This document shows, in pieces, positions 802-40,423 of a DNA stretch of 64,000 bases. Under the pieces are notes generated by a model that was not told the origin of the DNA, ran no database searches, and saw only the letters and a program-made list of their open reading frames with translations. Positions within the stretch are counted from its first letter, which is position 1. Each line of letters opens with the position of its first letter. The position numbers were made by a program, and so were the translations under genes. The stretch is taken from positions 186,001-250,000 of the IMG/VR virus record IMGVR_UViG_3300044846_005229. One strand, given 5' to 3'.

Positions 802-891
802 TAGGCGCGTAGGGAATCGAACCCTAACTAGCCGGTAATCTGCCGGAGAGGTCTTCATAAGGGACCCTGTGCTACCGTACACCACACGCCC
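802..891 (-). tRNA. tRNA with UAU anticodon (Ile, AUA-reading) and long variable arm
   Basis: GGGCGTG/CGCGCCT acceptor, GTGT/GCAC D stem, GGTC(C)/(A)GACC anticodon stem with loop CTTATGA, CCGG-CAGATTA-CCGG variable arm, TAGGG-TTCGATT-CCCTA T arm, A73; CCA not encoded. Confidence 0.8.
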
Positions 892-3589: not shown

Positions 3590-4054
3590 TTAAAACGTTA
3601 CGACCCTGAAGGGCCTTACACTAAATTTAAAAAGTTTAGGGACAACATCATCATAATTTTGGCGGACATTCACTGCATGTGCGTCCAAGAAACTAAATTC
3701 AGATGAACTCCAATAGCGGTGGTTGCCACCGAAGAACTGAGGAATTTGTTTGTGTGCCAGGAGCAGAAGATCTTTTGACGGAATGAACCATTCTGGATCG
3801 AATTTTCTGTCCCACTCGTTCTCGTCCCAGACCCTACTCATTATGGTACCCCAATCAGACTCAAACTCTTTTTCCTTGGAGCAAACGACAATAGCGTGAT
3901 TGTCACCCTTAACCAAGACGATGCTTCCATCTTCAAGTACGTCCCCTACGCAAGCATCGGAAACTTTTTTGTAGTTGCGTAGGTCTTGCCTTAAGGTTTC
4001 TAGATGTCTCTCGGCTTCTTGAATTTTTTGAGTGATGCCAGTCAAACGATCCAT
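3590..4054 (-). CDS. DUF1566/Lcl C-terminal (C-type-lectin-like) domain protein
   Basis: WFIPSKDLL...YWSSSE...A..VN...VRPFR pattern. Confidence 0.55.
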   Translation of the reverse strand: MDRLTGITQKIQEAERHLETLRQDLRNYKKVSDACVGDVLEDGSIVLVKGDNHAIVVCSKEKEFESDWGTIMSRVWDENEWDRKFDPEWFIPSKDLLLLAHKQIPQFFGGNHRYWSSSEFSFLDAHAVNVRQNYDDVVPKLFKFSVRPFRVVTF

Positions 4055-6206: not shown

Positions 6207-6983
6207 CTATATCAGGGGGTGGAGCCTGCCATCGTGGCCAAAATACCGGAGCACCTTGGTTTCCACATCGTACAGACAAAGTTTGGTATCTTCAGGGTCG
6301 ATTTCGCTATGGGAAGACCCACCCATTTGACCGTCGAGGACGATGTTTTTCTCGCTGATGTAAACATTATGATAATGTCCAGCGACCCGGACCCATTCCT
6401 TATCATCATCTTCCAGCCACCATGGGAGGCGATCAGACGTAACTTTGCCATCTTCCAGGGTAACCTTATAGAAAGGACCATAAATCATGGTATTCAGTTC
6501 CTTGCGGGTAATAGCATTGGGCATTACTTGGTGGGTGCCATTATATTTCGGGATGGGCAATCTGCGGGGGAAACAAGCGTGAGCGCACCGGTATTCGGTC
6601 CCTTCCGCATCCCTAAATACAAAGCCATAAGGCATCGAGTCAAGCCAAGGCAATACTTCACCGACTAAGTCAATTCCGCCTCTCTCAAAGTCATCTAAGG
6701 TAGTTCGCAAGTCTTGGAAAACCTTGACCTTGTTTCCCTTGAGGCATCGAACCAGTTTATTTTGGTGATTGCTTTGTAGGATAATAGTGCCAGGAATTTC
6801 CCTTTGAATTTGCCTCACTGCATGGTAAACTCCGACAGAATCCGAGGTTTCGCACCTTGAATCAAAAAGGTCCCCCAGTAGAATCGGGGTCAATCCTTCC
6901 GACAAGCAGTGCCCTAGGGCCGCTTCCAGGGGGGGCAACTGGGAATGGATGTCACCAATGATGGCGTAACGAATGTGTGTCAT
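6207..6983 (-). CDS. calcineurin-like metallophosphoesterase (PPP/Pnkp-phosphoesterase-like)
   Basis: IIGDIHS, LLGDLFD, QSNHQ, CAHAC and AGHYH motifs. Confidence 0.8.
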   Translation of the reverse strand: MTHIRYAIIGDIHSQLPPLEAALGHCLSEGLTPILLGDLFDSRCETSDSVGVYHAVRQIQREIPGTIILQSNHQNKLVRCLKGNKVKVFQDLRTTLDDFERGGIDLVGEVLPWLDSMPYGFVFRDAEGTEYRCAHACFPRRLPIPKYNGTHQVMPNAITRKELNTMIYGPFYKVTLEDGKVTSDRLPWWLEDDDKEWVRVAGHYHNVYISEKNIVLDGQMGGSSHSEIDPEDTKLCLYDVETKVLRYFGHDGRLHPLI

Positions 6984-7599: not shown

Positions 7600-7796
7600 C
7601 TAGTACGGCCTGAACAGCAAGGGAAAGATTATCCATTGGTCGGAAACTCCATCGGGATCAGAACTTGGCAATTATTTCGCCGGATAAACATCAGGGGGAT
7701 ACAACTGATTGATTGCGTCTCTAATTAGGAGAGCAGCGCTTTAAGGTTGTGATAGGCATTTTGCTGTGGGGGTTGTTTGGAACTGTTATCAGTGCC

Positions 7797-7825
7797 ACTC
7801 TAGCATGGTTGCTGCTAGGTGTCAA
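7797..7825 (-). promoter_or_regulatory. sigma70-like promoter
   Basis: TTGACA-17 nt-TAGAGT with extended TG. Confidence 0.6.
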
Positions 7826-7853
7826 CTCTTAACCAAGTTATAAATGTAGTGAA

Positions 7854-7965
7854 TGGGACCAGTAGGATTTGAACCTACACCTCTCCTTTAACGTAGGAAT
7901 TTAATTGCTGATGTATCTTTGACAAGATAACTTTCTTTAGCGCTCTGTCGTTGAGCTATGGTCCC
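7854..7965 (-). ncRNA. tRNA-like RNA with ~41-nt insert carrying a hairpin + CAGCAA between the D arm and an anticodon-like arm
   Basis: GGGACCA/TGGTCCC acceptor, GCTC/GAGC D stem, GTAGG-TTCAAAT-CCTAC T arm, TTCCT-ACGTTAA-AGGAG anticodon-like hairpin, insert containing TATCTT-GTCA-AAGATA-CAT-CAGCAA. Confidence 0.8.
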
Positions 7966-8005
7966 TTGTTTGCTTCGCAAATAGCTTGTTGAAACATGGT
8001 TTAGC

Positions 8006-8054
8006 TAGATAGTTGGTTTTCCGATTTTGAAGGGGATGGTTGCTGAACTATCTA
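8006..8054 (-). ncRNA. stand-alone CAGCAA stem-loop module
   Basis: TAGATAGTT/AACTATCTA 9-bp stem closing a 31-nt loop that starts CAGCAA and ends GAAAACC. Confidence 0.7.
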
Positions 8055-8072
8055 CGTTTGCCGAAGGCAAAG

Positions 8073-8199
8073 TCGAAGAGGCAAGATTCGAACTTGCGTA
8101 TGGCGGTTCCTTTAGCGCATTTGGTGTTGCTGAGCTACCTAAAGCATAACTAGATAGTCCTTTTGCATTACCGCCGCCTTACCACTTGGCTACTCTTCG
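8073..8199 (-). ncRNA. tRNA-like RNA (Cys-like scaffold) with enlarged anticodon loop carrying a hairpin + CAGCAA
   Basis: CGAAGAG/CTCTTCG acceptor, TAGCCAAGTGGTAAGGC D arm, GCGGT/ACCGC anticodon stem, GCAAG-TTCGAAT-CTTGC T arm; insert contains CTATCTAG/TTAGGTAG hairpin then CT-CAGCAA. Confidence 0.8.
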
Positions 8200-8233
8200 T
8201 TTTGGGTGTCTGGGTGTCTTAACCGTTAAAGGT

Positions 8234-8296
8234 CAACAAGGTGAGTTTTGCTGGATTTGAACCATTCCCCTTTGTTGCCCTGGTGAACTACCAGGG
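8234..8296 (-). ncRNA. structured element with T-loop hairpin and CAGCAA
   Basis: CCCTGGT-AGTTC-ACCAGGG hairpin; CAACAAAGG/CCTTGTTG stem enclosing TGG-TTCAAAT-CCA followed by GCAA. Confidence 0.5.
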
Positions 8297-8315
8297 AAGC
8301 TAACTTTATTTAAAC

Positions 8316-8367
8316 AAGATGGTTGGTTTTTCTGTTACAAAGAAAGGTTAGATTGCTGAACCATCTT
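8316..8367 (-). ncRNA. stand-alone CAGCAA stem-loop module
   Basis: AAGATGGTT/AACCATCTT 9-bp stem closing a 34-nt loop that starts CAGCAA and ends GAAAAACC; covaries with 8006-8054. Confidence 0.7.
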
Positions 8368-8407
8368 ACGGGATTGCCTTACTTACCGCCCATTAACCCT
8401 ATTTCCA

Positions 8408-9914
8408 TCAGGCGAATACCATACCCACAGAGTCATACCTTTCAGTATATACCGCGTCCCGCATCAGGGACAATGGGGGTAATTGCATTGCCGGTAAGAA
8501 CTGCGGTCAGGATTGACGGAGAGCAACCGCTAACGAGAGCGGTACCGGAATCATGGACCTTCATCGGGACGTTATCTGAGGAATTGACATTCCAGAAGAT
8601 GACATCAGGCAAGCTATAACCAGCTTGGGCATACTTGATTCGAATTGCTTCGTAGTTAGTGACTTTTTTTCCGCTATACCCCCAACCAGAACCAGTGCCA
8701 CCCATGACAACACAGTCATCAAACTGCATGTCTGAGACAATAATCAGTTTGCGGGGCATGTCTGACTCTGGAATGTTGTTCCGAACTGCAGTATCCAGAA
8801 TAAGGTCAAACGTCTTTTGGATGTCAGTGTTACCACCCCAATCTGCTCGGCTCAGGTTTCTAACCTTGCTGGAGAGACTATTGCCAGTCACAGTTTGTAG
8901 GGAGGGGTTACCCGAAAATGTTAGAAACTTGTTTTTCCAGATGCCAGTATTACGCTCTGCGATATACATCGCCAGAGAGATGGATACTGCCATCGGACGA
9001 CCCTCCATGGAACCGCTAACATCGGCAACAACAAGCCCATTCAATTCCTTGCCTTCCATGTAGTTGGGTAGAGCCTGCCAGAGGAGTTCAAGAGTATCGT
9101 TTGATTCGTTGTTATAGAGACACTTCTCAACGATGTCATACGGGTACAAAGTACCGGCATTGATTTTTGCCTCGCCTTTCTTGACTGCATCGAGGTAAGA
9201 CTGGTAGCGAGCACCATCATGGTTAGCAAAAGCTTTCCGATACATGAAGCCTGCACGAGAAGGCAACTTGCTATACTCAATGGCGTCCCACTCACGGGCA
9301 CACATTGGTTGTTCTACGATATTGATTTGGGTGCGAAGCGCAGTCAGGGCCTTGCGGTATTGACGCTCATTCCAACCCATTGCCTTAGCGATAAGACGGC
9401 CAACCCGCTTGGATTCCTTGCTAGAAGCGTTAATGGAAGGTAGCCATTTTGCTAGTAGTGACACTGGGTTTCCAACTTCGGTGTTCAGGTCAGTATTAAG
9501 CTGCGTCTTAATTGCTTCTAGGGCGATGACCCAAACTAGCGTCCCTTCGAGGGCCACAACATCGTCCCAGCGACCGTACTGCGGGATCAGGCCTACCAGC
9601 TTAGCTCCAATGGTCGCATCATTGCGAACCAGCTCCTTGAAGACTTCCCGGAAGATTTTTCGTTCTCCTTGCCCAATCCCCCTAATATCACGTGCCCAAA
9701 ACAGGATCCGGGTCGCAGTTTCAGGATCTTCGGCATAGGCTGACTTAAAGAGTTTAATGGCTGCATCAACATTATCACGGCAAGCTGCGATTTTACCGAA
9801 AAGGTCTAGGTTCTTTTGGCCCGTGGACCTATAGGCCTTTGCGCCGTTTGCAGTTGTGGTGATATTGGAGTTGGTATCCAGTTGGTTCTCAAGTGCATTC
9901 AAAAAGGTTGTCAT
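8408..9914 (-). CDS. DUF2828 family TROVE/Ro60-like + vWA domain protein (apparent +1 frameshift in the G5 run at 8475-8479)
   Basis: TTANGAKAYRSTG, WARDIRG.GQGER, YGRWDD, AKWLP, MIDAS VVADVSGSM, IVSDMQFD; removing one C restores the C-terminus ITPLSLMRDAVYTERYDSV. Confidence 0.85.
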
Positions 9915-10064
9915 TTTTCTTCTCTCAAGTTGATTGTTTTGTGTTTGTGTTTCGGATACAAATAATAGCTGTATCAACTTTGCCCCTAGGAGTTAATTTT
10001 AGGGGTGGTGGTGGGGGGCACTGACGGCCCCGATATTGGGCAGTTTGTAACTTAGCTGGGTCAA

Positions 10065-10354: not shown

Positions 10355-10897
10355 TTAGTACCCTAAATCGGGAGGAGCTTTGCCCCCAACTACAGCCGGT
10401 GAAAACCTAACTACGGTTACCTCCCCCATGTCCCCCAAATCTTCGGCAAACTTGTTCAAGCTAGCGAGAACCCTATCGGGGTTTCCACCTGCCAAACCAC
10501 ACCCAATCATTGGGAATCCGATTTTAACGGGAATTCTTGTTTCAGGGGGTAAACCCTGGCGACATACCTTAGCATATAACCTATTGAGAAATGTCTCAAA
10601 GGCTTCGTACTCAAATATGTCTTTGCCACGCCCAAATGTAAACTGGGTATAGGCGTTAATAATCGTAAAGCCACAACCATTTGCCCCCACAACGTCAACT
10701 TCGGAAAAGGTCCCGAGTTTATTCCGGGTGCCATACTTTGTCTGTCTATCGGCGATAGCCACCTCTGGCCACCTCTTCACAATTTGACCGGCGATACCGC
10801 TAGCCATCGTATGGAAGCAATTGGCACCATGACAAATAATGTCGAAGTCACCATTGTCTGCCATTGTGAGTAGGTTGTTGTCAATAATTGTTAACAT
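10355..10897 (-). CDS. macrodomain (ADP-ribose binding/hydrolase) protein
   Basis: HGANCFHTMASGIAGQI, INAYTQF, IGFPMIGCGLAGG motifs typical of phage macrodomains. Confidence 0.9.
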   Translation of the reverse strand: MLTIIDNNLLTMADNGDFDIICHGANCFHTMASGIAGQIVKRWPEVAIADRQTKYGTRNKLGTFSEVDVVGANGCGFTIINAYTQFTFGRGKDIFEYEAFETFLNRLYAKVCRQGLPPETRIPVKIGFPMIGCGLAGGNPDRVLASLNKFAEDLGDMGEVTVVRFSPAVVGGKAPPDLGY

Positions 10898-10950
10898 CCG
10901 ATTAGGTCCAATTTGGGTGGGGAATTTGTGAGATGGCGATACCCTACCAC

Positions 10951-11778
10951 TCAAAGTGGCGGGTGGTTAAGTTTATTGAGCACATATTCAAGTCTGGTGG
11001 GCTTTAGATCAAGGGGGATGTTATCTAAATTACCTGATGCGCCCGTACAATCGCCTTCTACTCCTGTGCAGTCCCCAATTAAGTTAGAGCAGTCCCCAAT
11101 TAAGTTAATTACCCTCCCGTATAAACCAGTGCAATTGCCGGTTAGGCCAGAAATAAATCCCCTCAGATTGGAGCAATCACCAAATAAATCCGGGTTAATG
11201 GTCCCTAAAGCCCCCGATAGGTCACCTGTTAATTTAGGGTTAATCATCCCTTTAACACCACTCAAGTCCCCGGTTAAGTCTTTATTAAGAGTACCGGATA
11301 AGCGTCCCCATGGGTCAATACCTAAACCCATATTACCGTACAAATTAGAAACATCCCCCTCCAATGATGGCAAGATTCTTCCCCTAAGATCGGAGTTTAT
11401 CTCACCTGTCAAATAACTCACATCTCCAATAAGCCTAGGATTGATCGTTCCACTGAGGTTAGAACAATCACCGAAGAGGAAAGGGCTTAGTTCGTCATAG
11501 GAGAGGCTCGGGTTTAACCCCTTTTGTACAGCCCCCTCACCATCTAACCAAAAAAATCTTTCGCTAGATTCAAAGAAGTCATGTATCTTGCTTCTCATTT
11601 CTAAGATTTCCGGCTCCAGGGGTATTTGAGGGGTTGCTTCAAATAAGGGTACAAGCTTGCCAACCGCTTCATCCCATGCGTAAGGTGTACGGATATTGTC
11701 ACCTAGCTTAAACCTGACTTCATTTAAGTCATAATAAAAGTCTAGCAGAACATTAAGATTGTCTTGTAACTGAGTCAT
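10951..11778 (-). CDS. protein with GD(C/V/L)S-x-L-x-G tandem repeats (probable beta-solenoid)
   Basis: About 12 imperfect repeats such as GDCSNLSG, GDVSYLTG, GDLSGVKG, GDCTGVEG. Confidence 0.7.
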   Translation of the reverse strand: MTQLQDNLNVLLDFYYDLNEVRFKLGDNIRTPYAWDEAVGKLVPLFEATPQIPLEPEILEMRSKIHDFFESSERFFWLDGEGAVQKGLNPSLSYDELSPFLFGDCSNLSGTINPRLIGDVSYLTGEINSDLRGRILPSLEGDVSNLYGNMGLGIDPWGRLSGTLNKDLTGDLSGVKGMINPKLTGDLSGALGTINPDLFGDCSNLRGFISGLTGNCTGLYGRVINLIGDCSNLIGDCTGVEGDCTGASGNLDNIPLDLKPTRLEYVLNKLNHPPL

Positions 11779-39920: not shown

Positions 39921-40165
39921 GGGGACCGAAGCCCCCCGCAATGAGTCAGAATGCTATCGCTCAAACGGCGACGGCAGTCCTCTCGAATTTGACGATTTTG
40001 TTAGCGTCTATGTTGTGCTTATGCAAGCGGCTTTCGGTAATTGGCTTGCTGTCGGTCGATTCCAGAGCGGACCCTCGAAAGGGAAATGGATCCGGGGCGA
40101 TTCGAACGCCCGTGTCGCGCAGTAGTGACAACTACCTACACCCAGTTTTTAGCCGTATGGTAGGG
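39921..40165 (-). ncRNA. ssrA: two-piece (circularly permuted) tmRNA; tag ANKIVKFERTAVAV*
   Basis: T arm GGGCG-TTCGAAT-CGCCC (40095-40111) and 3' acceptor CGGATCC-A precede a 12-nt spacer and 5' acceptor GGGTCCG with G3-U70; TAGAC-GCT resume context; tag ORF 39961-40005; outer ends approximate. Confidence 0.92.
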
Positions 40166-40177
40166 CTTTAACAATTA

Positions 40178-40423
40178 TTACCCGTTACAGTTAAAAGTCG
40201 ATGTAATCTCATACTGCCTAAGTAAGTTAAACAACTCAGTTTGAAGGTCTTCGAAGCCGCCCACAAGTTGATCCTGAGTGACCGCATAGCAAGGACCCAC
40301 TTTAGAGCCAGCCCAAGGTATGATTTGTTTGTGCTCTAGAATCTTGTTCCTGTACTTAAGAAGTAGGGAGTTAATCCCGGAGGCTAGCTGAACTTTATCG
40401 GATAGAACTATTTGTTTTAACAT
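40178..40423 (-). CDS. hypothetical protein
   Basis: Start MLKQIV. Confidence 0.55.
   Translation of the reverse strand: MLKQIVLSDKVQLASGINSLLLKYRNKILEHKQIIPWAGSKVGPCYAVTQDQLVGGFEDLQTELFNLLRQYEITSTFNCNG

What the first reader, a model, noticed from the sequence alone, without database searches (positions are those of the whole stretch)
7854..9914. Candidate new ribonucleoprotein system: DUF2828 (TROVE/Ro60-like vWA) gene followed by an array of CAGCAA-module RNAs, some grafted into tRNA scaffolds
Seen: the ~510 nt after the DUF2828 stop (8408) are non-coding. They contain CAGCAA five times on the coding strand (7905, 8040, 8127, 8248, 8353) in ~460 nt, where about 0.1 copies of a given hexamer are expected by chance. 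In four of them CAGCAA sits at the 3' end of the same helix, consensus (A/T)AG(A/G)T.../...ATCT(A/T)G; the fifth follows a T-loop stem. Two modules are free-standing stem-plus-large-loop units and two are embedded in otherwise well-formed tRNA bodies. No promoter or terminator is evident between the gene and the cluster; the next promoter is at 7797-7825. Established: Ro60/Rsr (TROVE + vWA) binds Y RNAs encoded beside it, and bacterial YrlA RNAs join a Ro-binding helix to a tRNA-like domain. Inference: the CAGCAA helix is the DUF2828 binding site, and the tRNA-like carriers tether it to a tRNA-recognising partner (nuclease, ligase, ribosome) or act as decoys for anticodon nucleases. I do not know of a description of this RNA architecture for DUF2828.
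Basis: partly seen in the sequence, partly recalled or inferred. Interest (0 to 1): 0.93.

Follow-up and report, generated by a model that had tools for sequence, protein, structure and literature searches.

The report
Phage Ro-like protein with partner RNAs
A large cyanophage encodes a ring-shaped Ro60-like protein next to small structured RNAs that share one helix-plus-CAGCAAU signature, some built into tRNA bodies, and the same gene/RNA pairing recurs in phages and prophages of at least five bacterial phyla, pointing to a widespread and apparently undescribed relative of the Ro60/Y-RNA particle.

Summary
Downstream of the DUF2828/DUF7788 gene (window 8442-9914, minus strand) lie two free-standing stem-loops and two tRNA-like RNAs. 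All four carry the same helix, followed by single-stranded CAGCAA(U).

The helix covaries strongly. In cyanophage contigs the free modules sit inside tRNA arrays, often abutting tRNAs. The tRNA-embedded form is a circular permutation of the free form.

The same "stem, 0-4 nt, CAGCAA" elements cluster on the gene strand beside DUF2828 genes in Felixounavirus, a cluster-L mycobacteriophage, Listeria, Bacillus, Staphylococcus, Campylobacter and Vibrio phages, and in 75 of 80 bacterial (prophage) loci. A true TROVE phage lacks them.

Foldseek puts the protein model on Ro60 structures over its full length. No Rfam family matches the modules, and only one distant member resembles YrlA weakly.

Best reading: a second Ro-like protein family with its own class of Y-like RNAs, released from tRNA-array transcripts, with autoregulation through the 5'UTR copy. 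Binding and function are inferred, not shown. This is a new variant of a known kind.

The parts
9926..9981 (-). 5'UTR module. An 8-bp stem (AAGUUGAU/AUCAACUU) carries a degenerate motif (ACAGCUA). Its 3' arm ends directly before the Shine-Dalgarno-like GAGAG and the AUG at 9914. Candidate translational operator.
   Evidence: Model R1 scores it 28.2 bits, E 0.0016, and it was not in the seed. The same element, with UCAGCAAU, sits at the same place in many relatives. Fold.
8442..9914 (-). DUF2828/DUF7788 protein gene (490 aa as an uninterrupted ORF). It has a helical-repeat N-domain and a vWA domain with the MIDAS motif DVSGS.
   Evidence: Pfam DUF7788 4e-48 and DUF2828 2e-34. PHROG 850 'RNA-binding protein' 5e-145. 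The top 11 Foldseek hits are all Ro60 structures over 504-580 columns, best E 6e-7. The vWA domain aligns with the Ro60 vWA at hhalign probability 75%.
8408..8441 (-). Out-of-frame tail. It encodes the family-typical C-terminus (..DAVYTERYD..F) and is reachable only through a +1 shift at the C5 run 8475-8479. Either an assembly error or a real frameshift.
   Evidence: Three-frame translation compared with L002, L027, L004 and L012.
8315..8368 (-). Free-standing module 1: 10-11-bp stem, CAGCAAU at the 5' side of the loop, a small inner hairpin, and an A-rich 3' side.
   Evidence: R1 58.8 bits. Fold. Identical architecture in 100+ modules elsewhere.
8278..8296 (-). Conserved 7-bp hairpin (CCCUGGU/ACCAGGG) between module 1 and the remnant.
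   Evidence: Conserved in L002 and L027, with one A-to-G change that keeps pairing as G-U. Fold.
8200..8272 (-). Decayed remnant of a tRNA-like chimera.
   Evidence: Aligned with intact 118-nt chimeras in L002 and L027, the CAGCAA here falls on their D-arm GCAGCAC.
8073..8199 (-). tRNA-like chimera 2. It has an acceptor stem, D arm, 5-bp anticodon-stem base, T arm and a 62-nt insert. The insert holds the capped module helix plus CAGCAA (8127-8157).
   Evidence: Rfam tRNA 47.6 bits. The body is invariant and the helix covaries across 8 relatives. ARAGORN with introns gives only an implausible His(AUG) with the 'intron' inside the anticodon.
8057..8070 (-). Short G+C hairpin (UUGCC UUCG GGCAA) between chimera 2 and module 2.
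   Evidence: Folds.
8005..8055 (-). Free-standing module 2: 9-bp stem UAGAUAGUU/AACUAUCUA followed by CAGCAAC.
   Evidence: R1 48.6 bits. Fold z-score -2.3.
7854..7965 (-). tRNA-like chimera 1. A full tRNA body carries a 54-nt insert. The insert holds the capped helix plus CAGCAAU (7905-7929), followed by a weak anticodon-like hairpin.
   Evidence: Rfam tRNA 47.8 bits. Fold z-score -3.8. Homologues in L004, L027, L057 and L078.
7797..7825 (-). Sigma-70-like promoter (TTGACA, 17 nt, TAGAGT) for the next gene. It marks the end of the RNA cluster, and its spacer contains another CAGCAA inside a palindrome.
   Evidence: sequence.

Best explanation
The locus encodes a Ro60-like ribonucleoprotein system. 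The DUF2828/DUF7788 protein has a helical-repeat domain plus a Ro60-type vWA/MIDAS domain. It most likely binds a family of small non-coding RNAs through a shared module.

The module is a 9-11-bp helix with a conserved outer box (WAGR.../...YCUW), followed immediately by single-stranded CAGCAAU, with an A-rich opposite strand.

The RNAs have no promoters or terminators of their own. They sit in or beside tRNA arrays on the tRNA strand, often abutting tRNAs. RNase P and RNase Z-type processing of the polycistronic transcript would therefore release them as discrete 50-125-nt species.

In the free form the helix is closed by the RNA's own 5' and 3' ends, as in Y RNAs. In the chimeric form the helix is capped by a loop and spliced into the anticodon region of a complete tRNA body. 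This gives a tRNA-shaped RNA that carries the protein-binding module.

A weaker copy of the module in the gene's own 5'UTR, abutting the ribosome-binding site, would let surplus protein repress its own translation.

By analogy with Ro60/Y RNA, the RNAs would gate the ring or tether it to tRNA-handling or RNA-degrading enzymes during infection. Possible roles are surveillance or repair of the phage's large tRNA set, or acting as decoys for tRNA-targeting host nucleases.

Shown: the RNA family, its structure, its permutation, its placement, its association with the gene across phyla, and the Ro60-like fold.

Inferred: protein-RNA binding, processing, autoregulation and the downstream role.
For: **RNA family**
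- 52 free modules give 94% paired cells, 6 of 10 pairs with compensatory changes, and 0 of 500 shuffles as good.
- In an unconstrained pattern scan, 62 of 106 distinct hits had complementary variable positions, against 14% expected by chance.
- All modules lie on the gene/tRNA strand.

**Within the window**
- A full covariance-model scan finds only the two modules and the 5'UTR copy.

**Chimeras**
- 54 distinct tRNA-like chimeras carry the capped version of the same helix plus CAGCAAU.
- RNAalifold recovers acceptor, D, module helix and T stems, with 17 of 27 pairs compensatory.

**Placement**
- 76 of 101 modules lie within 100 nt of a tRNA.
- 29 begin at most 5 nt after a tRNA ends.

**Association with the gene**
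- Synechococcus phage B3 has the same layout.
- In seven distant phages there are 26 hits on the gene strand and 0 on the other; shuffles give a mean of 4.9.
- In 80 bacterial loci there are 254 hits against 61, and 75 of 80 loci are positive.
- 175 of these hits lie within 800 nt upstream of the start, against 9 on the other strand.
- The TROVE control phage McGee has no such cluster.
- 43 of 58 module-bearing pieces from the pattern scan lie on contigs that carry the gene.

**Link to Y RNAs**
- The JoeDirt element with CAGCAAU is a YrlA match, at 39.8 bits and E 1.5e-7.
- T-arm/D-arm-containing members occur in Felixounavirus, a Bacillus phage and 39 of 80 prophage loci.

**Protein**
- Foldseek's top 11 hits are Ro60 structures aligned over the full length.
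- The vWA domains align.

**Context**
- RtcB, phosphoesterases and tRNA arrays lie next to the gene in other phages.
- A metallophosphoesterase lies downstream in the window.

**5'UTR copies**
- They abut the SD or AUG in cyanophages and in Vibrio and Campylobacter phages.
Against: - No binding or expression data exist, so the pairing of protein and RNA rests on co-location alone.
- Pfam TROVE does not hit the protein. Neither a single sequence nor a sequence profile finds Ro60 in the PDB.
- hhalign aligns only the vWA domain.
- The structure model is mediocre (pLDDT 67.5), and the Foldseek TM-scores are only 0.36-0.41.
- Modules also occur in tRNA arrays more than 50 kb from the gene (L059), so a tRNA-array role independent of the protein is conceivable.
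- In Firmicutes prophages the modules lie mostly in the gene's leader, which fits a purely cis-regulatory role as well.
- The single-sequence folds of the free modules and the 5'UTR copy are not more stable than shuffles.
- The selection of modules for alignment A2 required a stem, so its pairing statistics are partly circular. One search is the unbiased check.
Confidence: 0.7

Rival explanations
1. The modules are cis-acting leader or operator elements only. They control transcription, stability or translation of the DUF2828 mRNA, and are not stable trans-acting partner RNAs.
For: In 80 bacterial loci, 175 modules lie within 800 nt upstream of the start codon. The Listeria, Bacillus and Campylobacter phages show the same. 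The window and its relatives have a copy abutting the SD. In Vibrio phage K566 the 3' arm covers the AUG.
Against: In the window, phage B3, Felixounavirus, JoeDirt and the Staphylococcus phage the modules lie downstream of the stop codon. In cyanophages they also sit between tRNAs far from the gene. Many are fused to tRNA-like bodies or contain T and D arms, which a leader does not need. The two roles are not exclusive.
Confidence: 0.12
2. The modules are punctuation or processing signals of phage tRNA arrays, such as nuclease entry sites or spacers. They would have no specific tie to the DUF2828 protein, which merely tends to be encoded near tRNA genes.
For: 76 of 101 cyanophage modules are within 100 nt of a tRNA, and many abut one. 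Modules occur in arrays more than 50 kb from the gene.
Against: The same CAGCAA signature flanks the gene where no tRNA array is present, in JoeDirt and in the Staphylococcus and Campylobacter phages; only 20 of 80 prophage loci hold a tRNA on the gene strand. The motif is conserved across phyla while the flanking tRNAs are not. In the reference phage collection the cyanophage module is found only in B3 and B23, both of which carry the gene.
Confidence: 0.08
3. The two long tRNA-like genes are ordinary tRNA genes interrupted by short introns. The introns are removed to give decoding tRNAs, and CAGCAA is an intron feature.
For: The Rfam tRNA model scores both above its gathering score.
Against: - The window call is His(AUG) with the insert inside the anticodon, and the other gene is not called at all.
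- Removing the insert leaves no consistent 7-nt anticodon loop.
- The anticodon-like hairpins are weak, variable or absent.
- There is no group I intron signal in the inserts, whereas true group I introns in neighbouring tRNA-Arg genes are detected.
- The same module exists free-standing and in 5'UTRs.
Confidence: 0.03
4. The repeats act at the DNA level, as miniature mobile elements, recombination hot spots or protein-binding palindromes.
For: There are many copies per genome, and the stems are palindromic with CTAG ends.
Against: Orientation is strictly one-stranded relative to the genes. G-U pairs are tolerated and compensatory changes keep the pairing. The single-stranded CAGCAAU is asymmetric. 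A circularly permuted version lies inside tRNA bodies.
Confidence: 0.02

Closest known systems
Ro60 (Rsr) with Y RNAs, especially bacterial YrlA/YrlB (Chen et al. 2014, PMC4201824; Rfam RF02553)
   Same: - A ~500-aa protein with helical repeats plus a vWA/MIDAS domain, which Foldseek places on Ro60.
- Several small RNA genes beside it on the same strand.
- RNAs closed by a terminal stem with a short conserved motif just after the 5' strand.
- At least one RNA with a tRNA-like domain.
- RNA-repair genes nearby in some genomes.
- One member (JoeDirt) is a weak YrlA match.
   Different: - The protein is Pfam DUF2828/DUF7788, not TROVE/vWA_Ro60.
- The RNA motif is CAGCAAU, not the GNCGAAN0-1G of YrlA/YrlB (PMC4201824).
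- No window RNA matches Rfam YrlA even at E up to 10.
- The cyanophage chimeras keep normal tRNA order with an open acceptor stem and a capped protein-site helix. This is a circular permutation of YrlA, where T precedes D and the acceptor is capped.
- Copies are embedded in tRNA arrays and in the gene's 5'UTR.
Thermus phage phiLo Ro60 with Yrl1/Yrl2 (PMC12135203; PDB 9l5y)
   Same: A phage-encoded Ro-type ring with phage-encoded Y-like RNAs. It is the best structural match of the model. According to that paper's abstract, it interacts with host PNPase and attenuates its activity.
   Different: phiLo Ro60 is described as a canonical Ro60 homologue. Here the sequence family differs, and the RNAs carry the CAGCAAU signature and tRNA grafts. 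No interaction data exist.
Small stable RNAs of unknown function encoded inside the phage T4 tRNA gene cluster (species 1 and 2; recalled from memory, not checked here)
   Same: Non-tRNA small RNAs co-transcribed with, and cut out of, a phage tRNA cluster.
   Different: No sequence comparison was made. T4 itself was not shown to carry DUF2828, and the resemblance is positional only.
Translational operators bound by their own gene product (for example phage coat-protein or RegA-type operators; general knowledge)
   Same: A hairpin carrying the protein's recognition motif, placed against the SD or AUG of its own mRNA.
   Different: This is a purely positional inference. The window's 5'UTR copy has a degenerate motif (ACAGCUA).

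Membership tests
Ro60/TROVE protein family | Pfam TROVE domain (PF05731) detectable in the sequence | tested here: not met
   Only DUF2828, DUF7788 and weak generic vWA models hit. The control McGee gp233 hits TROVE at 9e-50 and vWA_Ro60 at 4e-54.
Ro60/TROVE protein family | Ro60-type vWA domain with a MIDAS motif at the C-terminus | tested here: met
   The DVSGS motif is invariant. hhalign of the two family profiles aligns 156 columns of the vWA domains, probability 75%, E 2.5e-5.
Ro60/TROVE protein family | Overall fold: a ring of helical repeats closed by the vWA domain | tested here: inconclusive
   The top 11 Foldseek hits are Ro60 structures aligned over 504-580 columns, E 6e-7 to 1e-3, probability 1.0. 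However, TM-scores are 0.36-0.41 and the model's pLDDT is 67.5. Ring closure could not be inspected.
Ro60/Y RNA ribonucleoprotein system | One or more small RNA genes next to the protein gene on the same strand | tested here: met
   Window; relatives; distant phages; 80 bacterial loci.
Ro60/Y RNA ribonucleoprotein system | RNA closed by a terminal stem, with a conserved protein-recognition motif near the 5' end | tested here: met
   The terminal stem covaries. CAGCAAU lies 0-4 nt after the 5' strand in all lineages. That the motif is the recognition site is inferred.
Ro60/Y RNA ribonucleoprotein system | Physical binding of the RNAs by the protein | not testable with these tools
   Needs EMSA, pull-down or CLIP.
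Rfam YrlA (RF02553) | Score at or above the gathering threshold (69 bits) | tested here: not met
   No YrlA hit in window 7600-8600 at E up to 10, nor in L026. The JoeDirt element reaches 39.8 bits.
Rfam YrlA (RF02553) | GNCGAAN0-1G motif near the 5' end (PMC4201824) | tested here: not met
   The equivalent position holds CAGCAAU.
tRNA (RF00005) | Cloverleaf with acceptor, D and T arms, scoring above the gathering threshold | tested here: met
   47.8 and 47.6 bits against a threshold of 29. The stems covary in relatives.
tRNA (RF00005) | Canonical anticodon arm with a 7-nt loop that allows decoding | tested here: not met
   54- and 62-nt inserts replace it. The residual hairpins are weak and inconsistent. 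Default ARAGORN makes no call, and the intron-mode call is implausible.
Group I intron-containing tRNA genes | An insert with a group I catalytic core | tested here: not met
   No Intron_gpI hit in the window inserts. True examples in related contigs are detected: L129 at 61 bits.

The most novel reading that the evidence does not exclude
DUF2828 proteins and CAGCAAU-module RNAs form a second, phage-centred Ro/Y-RNA system that has gone unrecognised although it is present in hundreds of cultured phages. Examples are Felix O1-like phages, Listeria P100-like phages, cluster-L mycobacteriophages and T4-like phages of Vibrio and Aeromonas.

The RNAs would be cut out of tRNA-array transcripts by the tRNA-processing machinery. 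The tRNA-order chimeras would be matured like tRNAs. They would tether the ring to tRNA-repair or tRNA-degrading enzymes, or act as decoys for host anticodon nucleases, so protecting the phage's translation capacity.

The chimeras would also be the un-permuted link between tRNA and YrlA-type Y RNAs.
Probability: 0.3. Interest if true: 0.9.

Novelty: new variant of a known kind. Interest (0 to 1): 0.8.

Why it matters
Ro60 and its Y RNAs have been studied for decades as an autoantigen and an RNA quality-control particle. In bacteria only the TROVE-type protein and YrlA/YrlB-type RNAs are described.

This work points to a second protein family with a Ro60-like fold and its own RNA signature. The association holds from cyanophages to Firmicutes prophages. 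The system is present in phages that grow on laboratory hosts, so binding, processing and phenotype are directly testable.

It gives a function-level lead for a large domain of unknown function (PHROG 850; more than 5,900 relatives and 701 phage records). It explains "pseudo-tRNA" calls and unannotated gaps in phage tRNA arrays. It also offers natural examples of one protein-binding RNA module joined to tRNA scaffolds in three different topologies, which bears on how Y RNAs arose from tRNAs.

Tried and rejected
- **Rfam searches.** At permissive thresholds nothing matched the modules beyond tRNA hits for the chimeras.
- **PDB sequence searches.** Neither a single sequence nor a profile found Ro60.
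- **hhalign against one TROVE protein.** Only the MIDAS stretch aligned. With two family profiles the whole vWA domain aligned, but not the N-domain.
- **Genome-contig scan with the diverse alignment A6.** A1 worked.
- **Cyanophage covariance model R1.** It does not reach other lineages because their stems differ. Cross-lineage counts therefore rest on a simple rule (stem of at least 7 bp, offset of at most 4 nt, CAGCAA) with strand, shuffle and control-hexamer controls.
- **Anticodon mimicry.** I tested whether the residual hairpins of the chimeras mimic particular anticodon loops. Several have GUU-type 7-nt loops, but the loops are too variable and the stems too weak to support this.
- **Intron reading.** Rejected.
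- **A-rich 3' strand.** The enrichment is only moderate outside cyanophages.
- **PADLOC.** Nothing found for the protein or its neighbours.
- **Supplementary phage list of Chen et al. 2014.** It is not held. I therefore could not check whether any of their 22 phages carry DUF2828 rather than TROVE.
- **Literature.** No paper in the library links DUF2828 to RNA. A 2026 preprint on tRNA mimics does not cover this family.
Full report
**1. What is in the window**

The gene lies on the minus strand, with its ATG at 9914. The uninterrupted ORF ends at 8442-8444 and gives 490 aa.

- Pfam finds DUF7788 (4e-48) and DUF2828 (2e-34), plus weak generic vWA models, but not TROVE.
- PHROGs places it in family 850, 'RNA-binding protein' (5e-145).
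- The last nine residues do not match relatives. The window has a C5 run at 8475-8479 where close relatives have C4. The family-typical C-terminus is encoded in the +1 frame and stops at 8408-8410.

CAGCAA is present at all five stated positions. From the window-wide count of 69, about 0.25 copies are expected in 460 nt of one strand.

**2. Anatomy of the RNA cluster**

Rfam's tRNA model hits 7854-7965 and 8073-8199 at about 48 bits each, with 54- and 62-nt inserts where the anticodon loop should be. Default ARAGORN calls neither.

Two free-standing units, 8315-8368 and 8005-8055, are 9-11-bp stems. CAGCAA(U/C) follows directly after the 5' arm, and the loop has an A-rich 3' side.

In the two tRNA-like RNAs the same helix sequence (UAGRUnnU paired with AnnAYCUA) is capped by a short loop, and CAGCAA follows its 3' arm. 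The embedded form is therefore a circular permutation of the free form. In the free form the helix is closed by the RNA's ends and the 'loop' holds a small hairpin. In the embedded form the helix is capped and the 'loop' is the whole tRNA body.

A full covariance-model scan of the 64-kb window, built from 52 modules and run with filters off, finds the two free modules and one more. The third is at 9926-9981 in the gene's 5'UTR (28.2 bits, E 0.0016, not in the seed). Nothing else in the window is significant. Its 3' arm ends directly before the Shine-Dalgarno-like sequence.

The fifth CAGCAA (8248) is different. Close relatives have an intact 118-nt chimera at this place. The window's sequence is a decayed version in which CAGCAA aligns to the D arm.

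A promoter-like site at 7825-7797 ends the cluster, and no terminator-like site is present.

**3. Relatives**

The window is part of a 279-kb IMG/VR contig. The closest cultured phages are Synechococcus phages B3 and B23 (Kyanoviridae), at about 65% DNA identity over the gene. In B3 the gene is followed by free modules, a 110-nt 'tRNA-Pseudo' carrying the capped helix, another module, and then ordinary tRNAs.

In 28 related viral contigs the modules recur on the gene strand. They lie upstream of the gene (two types, one abutting the start codon) and downstream of it.

A pattern scan of all viral contigs left two stem positions free. It returned 106 distinct matches, of which 62 had complementary bases at those positions, against 14% expected by chance.

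On an alignment of 52 modules, the outer helix is 94% paired. Six of ten pairs show compensatory changes and no shuffle does as well. That set was chosen for having a stem, so one search is the fair test.

I collected 54 distinct chimeras. For 26 of one subtype, RNAalifold recovers acceptor, D, module and T helices, with 17 of 27 pairs compensatory. For the window's own 'CGAAGAG' type, the tRNA body is invariant while the capped helix covaries.

**4. Placement**

In these cyanophages the gene sits inside or beside very large tRNA arrays. Of 101 distinct free modules:

- 76 have a tRNA or chimera within 100 nt.
- 29 start at most 5 nt after a tRNA ends.
- 22 end at most 5 nt before the next tRNA begins.

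Modules also occur in a tRNA array about 60 kb from the gene in the window's own genome (L059). This, together with the absence of promoters and terminators, suggests that tRNA-processing enzymes release the modules from polycistronic array transcripts. That step is inferred.

**5. The decisive comparison: distant lineages**

The protein family is large, with more than 5,900 relatives in the protein search and 701 phage records. I fetched loci where the protein is only 35-43% identical to the window's. In each, 'stem, 0-4 nt, CAGCAA(U/A)' elements cluster beside the gene on its strand.

| Phage | Modules | Position |
|---|---|---|
| Mycobacteriophage JoeDirt | 3 | downstream |
| Felixounavirus HY02 | 4 | in the tRNA array that starts right after the gene |
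| Listeria phage LP-083-2 | 3 | upstream, with tRNAs and a ROOL-like RNA upstream and RtcB downstream |
| Bacillus phage Thrax2 | 5 | in and after a 17-tRNA array, upstream |
| Campylobacter F368 | 2 | upstream |
| Staphylococcus phage | 3 | downstream |
| Vibrio K566 | 1 | in the 5'UTR, with a 3' arm that covers the AUG |

Over the seven loci there are 26 hits on the gene strand and none on the other. Shuffles give a mean of 4.9 and a maximum of 10.

In 80 bacterial genome loci, mostly Firmicutes prophages:

- 75 have at least one hit.
- There are 254 gene-strand hits against 61 on the opposite strand; control hexamers give 17-52 per strand.
- 175 hits lie within 800 nt upstream of the start codon, against 9 on the other strand.

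A mycobacteriophage with a true TROVE/vWA_Ro60 protein (McGee) has a partial YrlA match next to its gene but no CAGCAA cluster. This is a single control.

In the reference phage collection the cyanophage-type module is found only in B3 and B23, and both carry the gene.

**6. Link to Y RNAs**

One JoeDirt element is a full-length match to Rfam YrlA. It scores 39.8 bits (E 1.5e-7), below the family's 69-bit threshold, and begins just after its CAGCAAU.

Members in Felixounavirus and the Bacillus phage have a T arm, an acceptor-like hairpin and a D arm inside the loop, in the YrlA order. 39 of 80 prophage loci have a module with a T-loop motif. In some of these the CAGCAA helix takes the place of the acceptor stem.

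Canonical YrlA/YrlB carry GNCGAAN0-1G near the 5' end. That motif is proposed as the Rsr contact, with Ro60 mainly touching the 5' strand (PMC4201824). Here CAGCAAU occupies the equivalent place.

The cyanophage chimeras keep normal tRNA order, with an open acceptor stem. They are the permuted counterpart of YrlA.

**7. The protein**

The AlphaFold model (pLDDT 67.5) shows about fourteen helices, followed by an alpha/beta domain with the invariant DVSGS MIDAS motif.

The eleven best Foldseek matches in the PDB are all Ro60 structures. They include Thermus phage phiLo, Xenopus and human Ro60, aligned over 504-580 columns (E 6e-7 to 1e-3). The following matches are vWA-only. TM-scores of 0.36-0.41 are modest, so ring geometry is not established.

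Profile-profile comparison with a TROVE family alignment aligns only the vWA domains (probability 75%). The family is best called Ro60-like in fold and architecture, but it is not a member of Pfam TROVE. Some phage annotations already say 'Ro-like RNA binding protein' for it.

**8. Mechanism and rivals**

The most economical reading is a Ro/Y-type particle.

- The protein recognises the helix box plus CAGCAAU.
- The RNAs are made by tRNA-type processing.
- The tRNA-shaped members present a tRNA elbow to other enzymes.
- The 5'UTR copy gives feedback control.

Neighbouring RtcB and phosphoesterase genes fit an RNA-repair or surveillance context, but they are weak evidence.

A purely cis-regulatory role fits the prophage leaders but not the downstream, array-embedded and tRNA-fused copies. 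A role as tRNA-array punctuation does not explain loci without tRNAs. The intron reading fails. DNA-level repeats do not fit the strand bias, the G-U pairs or the permutation.

**9. Novelty**

The kind, Ro60 with Y RNAs including tRNA-like YrlA, is known, and a phage Ro60 with Y-like RNAs has been solved (PMC12135203). I found no description, in Rfam 15 or in the paper library, of the following:

- the pairing of the DUF2828 family with a distinct, universally conserved CAGCAAU module;
- its embedding in tRNA arrays;
- the 5'UTR copies;
- the tRNA-order chimeras.

Binding and function remain to be shown.

Noticed in passing
window 39921-40183 (-); also L030 7967-8218 (+): A phage-encoded two-piece (permuted) cyanobacterial-type tmRNA. 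It scores 72.8 bits in the window and 116 bits in a related contig, where it lies about 200 nt upstream of the DUF2828 gene.
   Followed up: no
window 8475-8479 (-): A C5 homopolymer where close relatives have C4. It shifts the DUF2828 reading frame and replaces the conserved 21-residue C-terminus with 9 unrelated residues. Either an assembly error or a real frameshift.
   Followed up: partly
window 802-891 (-): ARAGORN calls a 90-nt tRNA-Ile(UAU), unusually long for this class, that Rfam's tRNA model does not report at its gathering score. It may carry an extra arm or insert.
   Followed up: no
window 7797-7825 (-): The promoter-like site after the cluster has CAGCAA in its spacer, inside the palindrome CTAGCA...TGCTAG. 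This is conserved in L002. It may be coincidence, or a further protein site on read-through RNA.
   Followed up: no
window 6210-6983 (-) and 10358-10954 (-): A calcineurin-like metallophosphoesterase lies downstream, and a weak Macro-domain / PHROG 'phosphatase' protein lies upstream of the gene. Phosphoesterases also neighbour the gene in JoeDirt, Thrax2 and the Listeria phage.
   Followed up: partly
L146 1471-2022 (+), Listeria phage LP-083-2: A ROOL-like RNA (87.4 bits, below the 99.1 threshold, E 1e-16) lies among tRNAs about 1 kb upstream of the DUF2828 gene. An RtcB ligase gene lies 1.3 kb downstream.
   Followed up: no
L129 7055-7331; L126 12072-12356: tRNA-Arg(UCU) genes in related cyanophage arrays carry true group I introns of about 200 nt; Rfam Intron_gpI scores 61 bits in L129.
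   Followed up: no
L161 2739, L162 2743 and other Firmicutes prophage loci: A third topology. The CAGCAA helix replaces the acceptor stem of a tRNA-like RNA that keeps D-loop, anticodon-arm and T-arm elements in normal order.
   Followed up: partly
L020 7285-7387 (+): A wcaG RNA motif (79 bits) about 3 kb downstream of the DUF2828 locus in a related contig.
   Followed up: no
L012-L022 at about 3860-3930; L001 5053-5115 (-): Many relatives, but not the window, have a second, longer module type upstream of the 5'UTR copy. Its stem is UAAGAUGAG/CUCAUCUUG and its motif is GCAGCAAU.
   Followed up: partly
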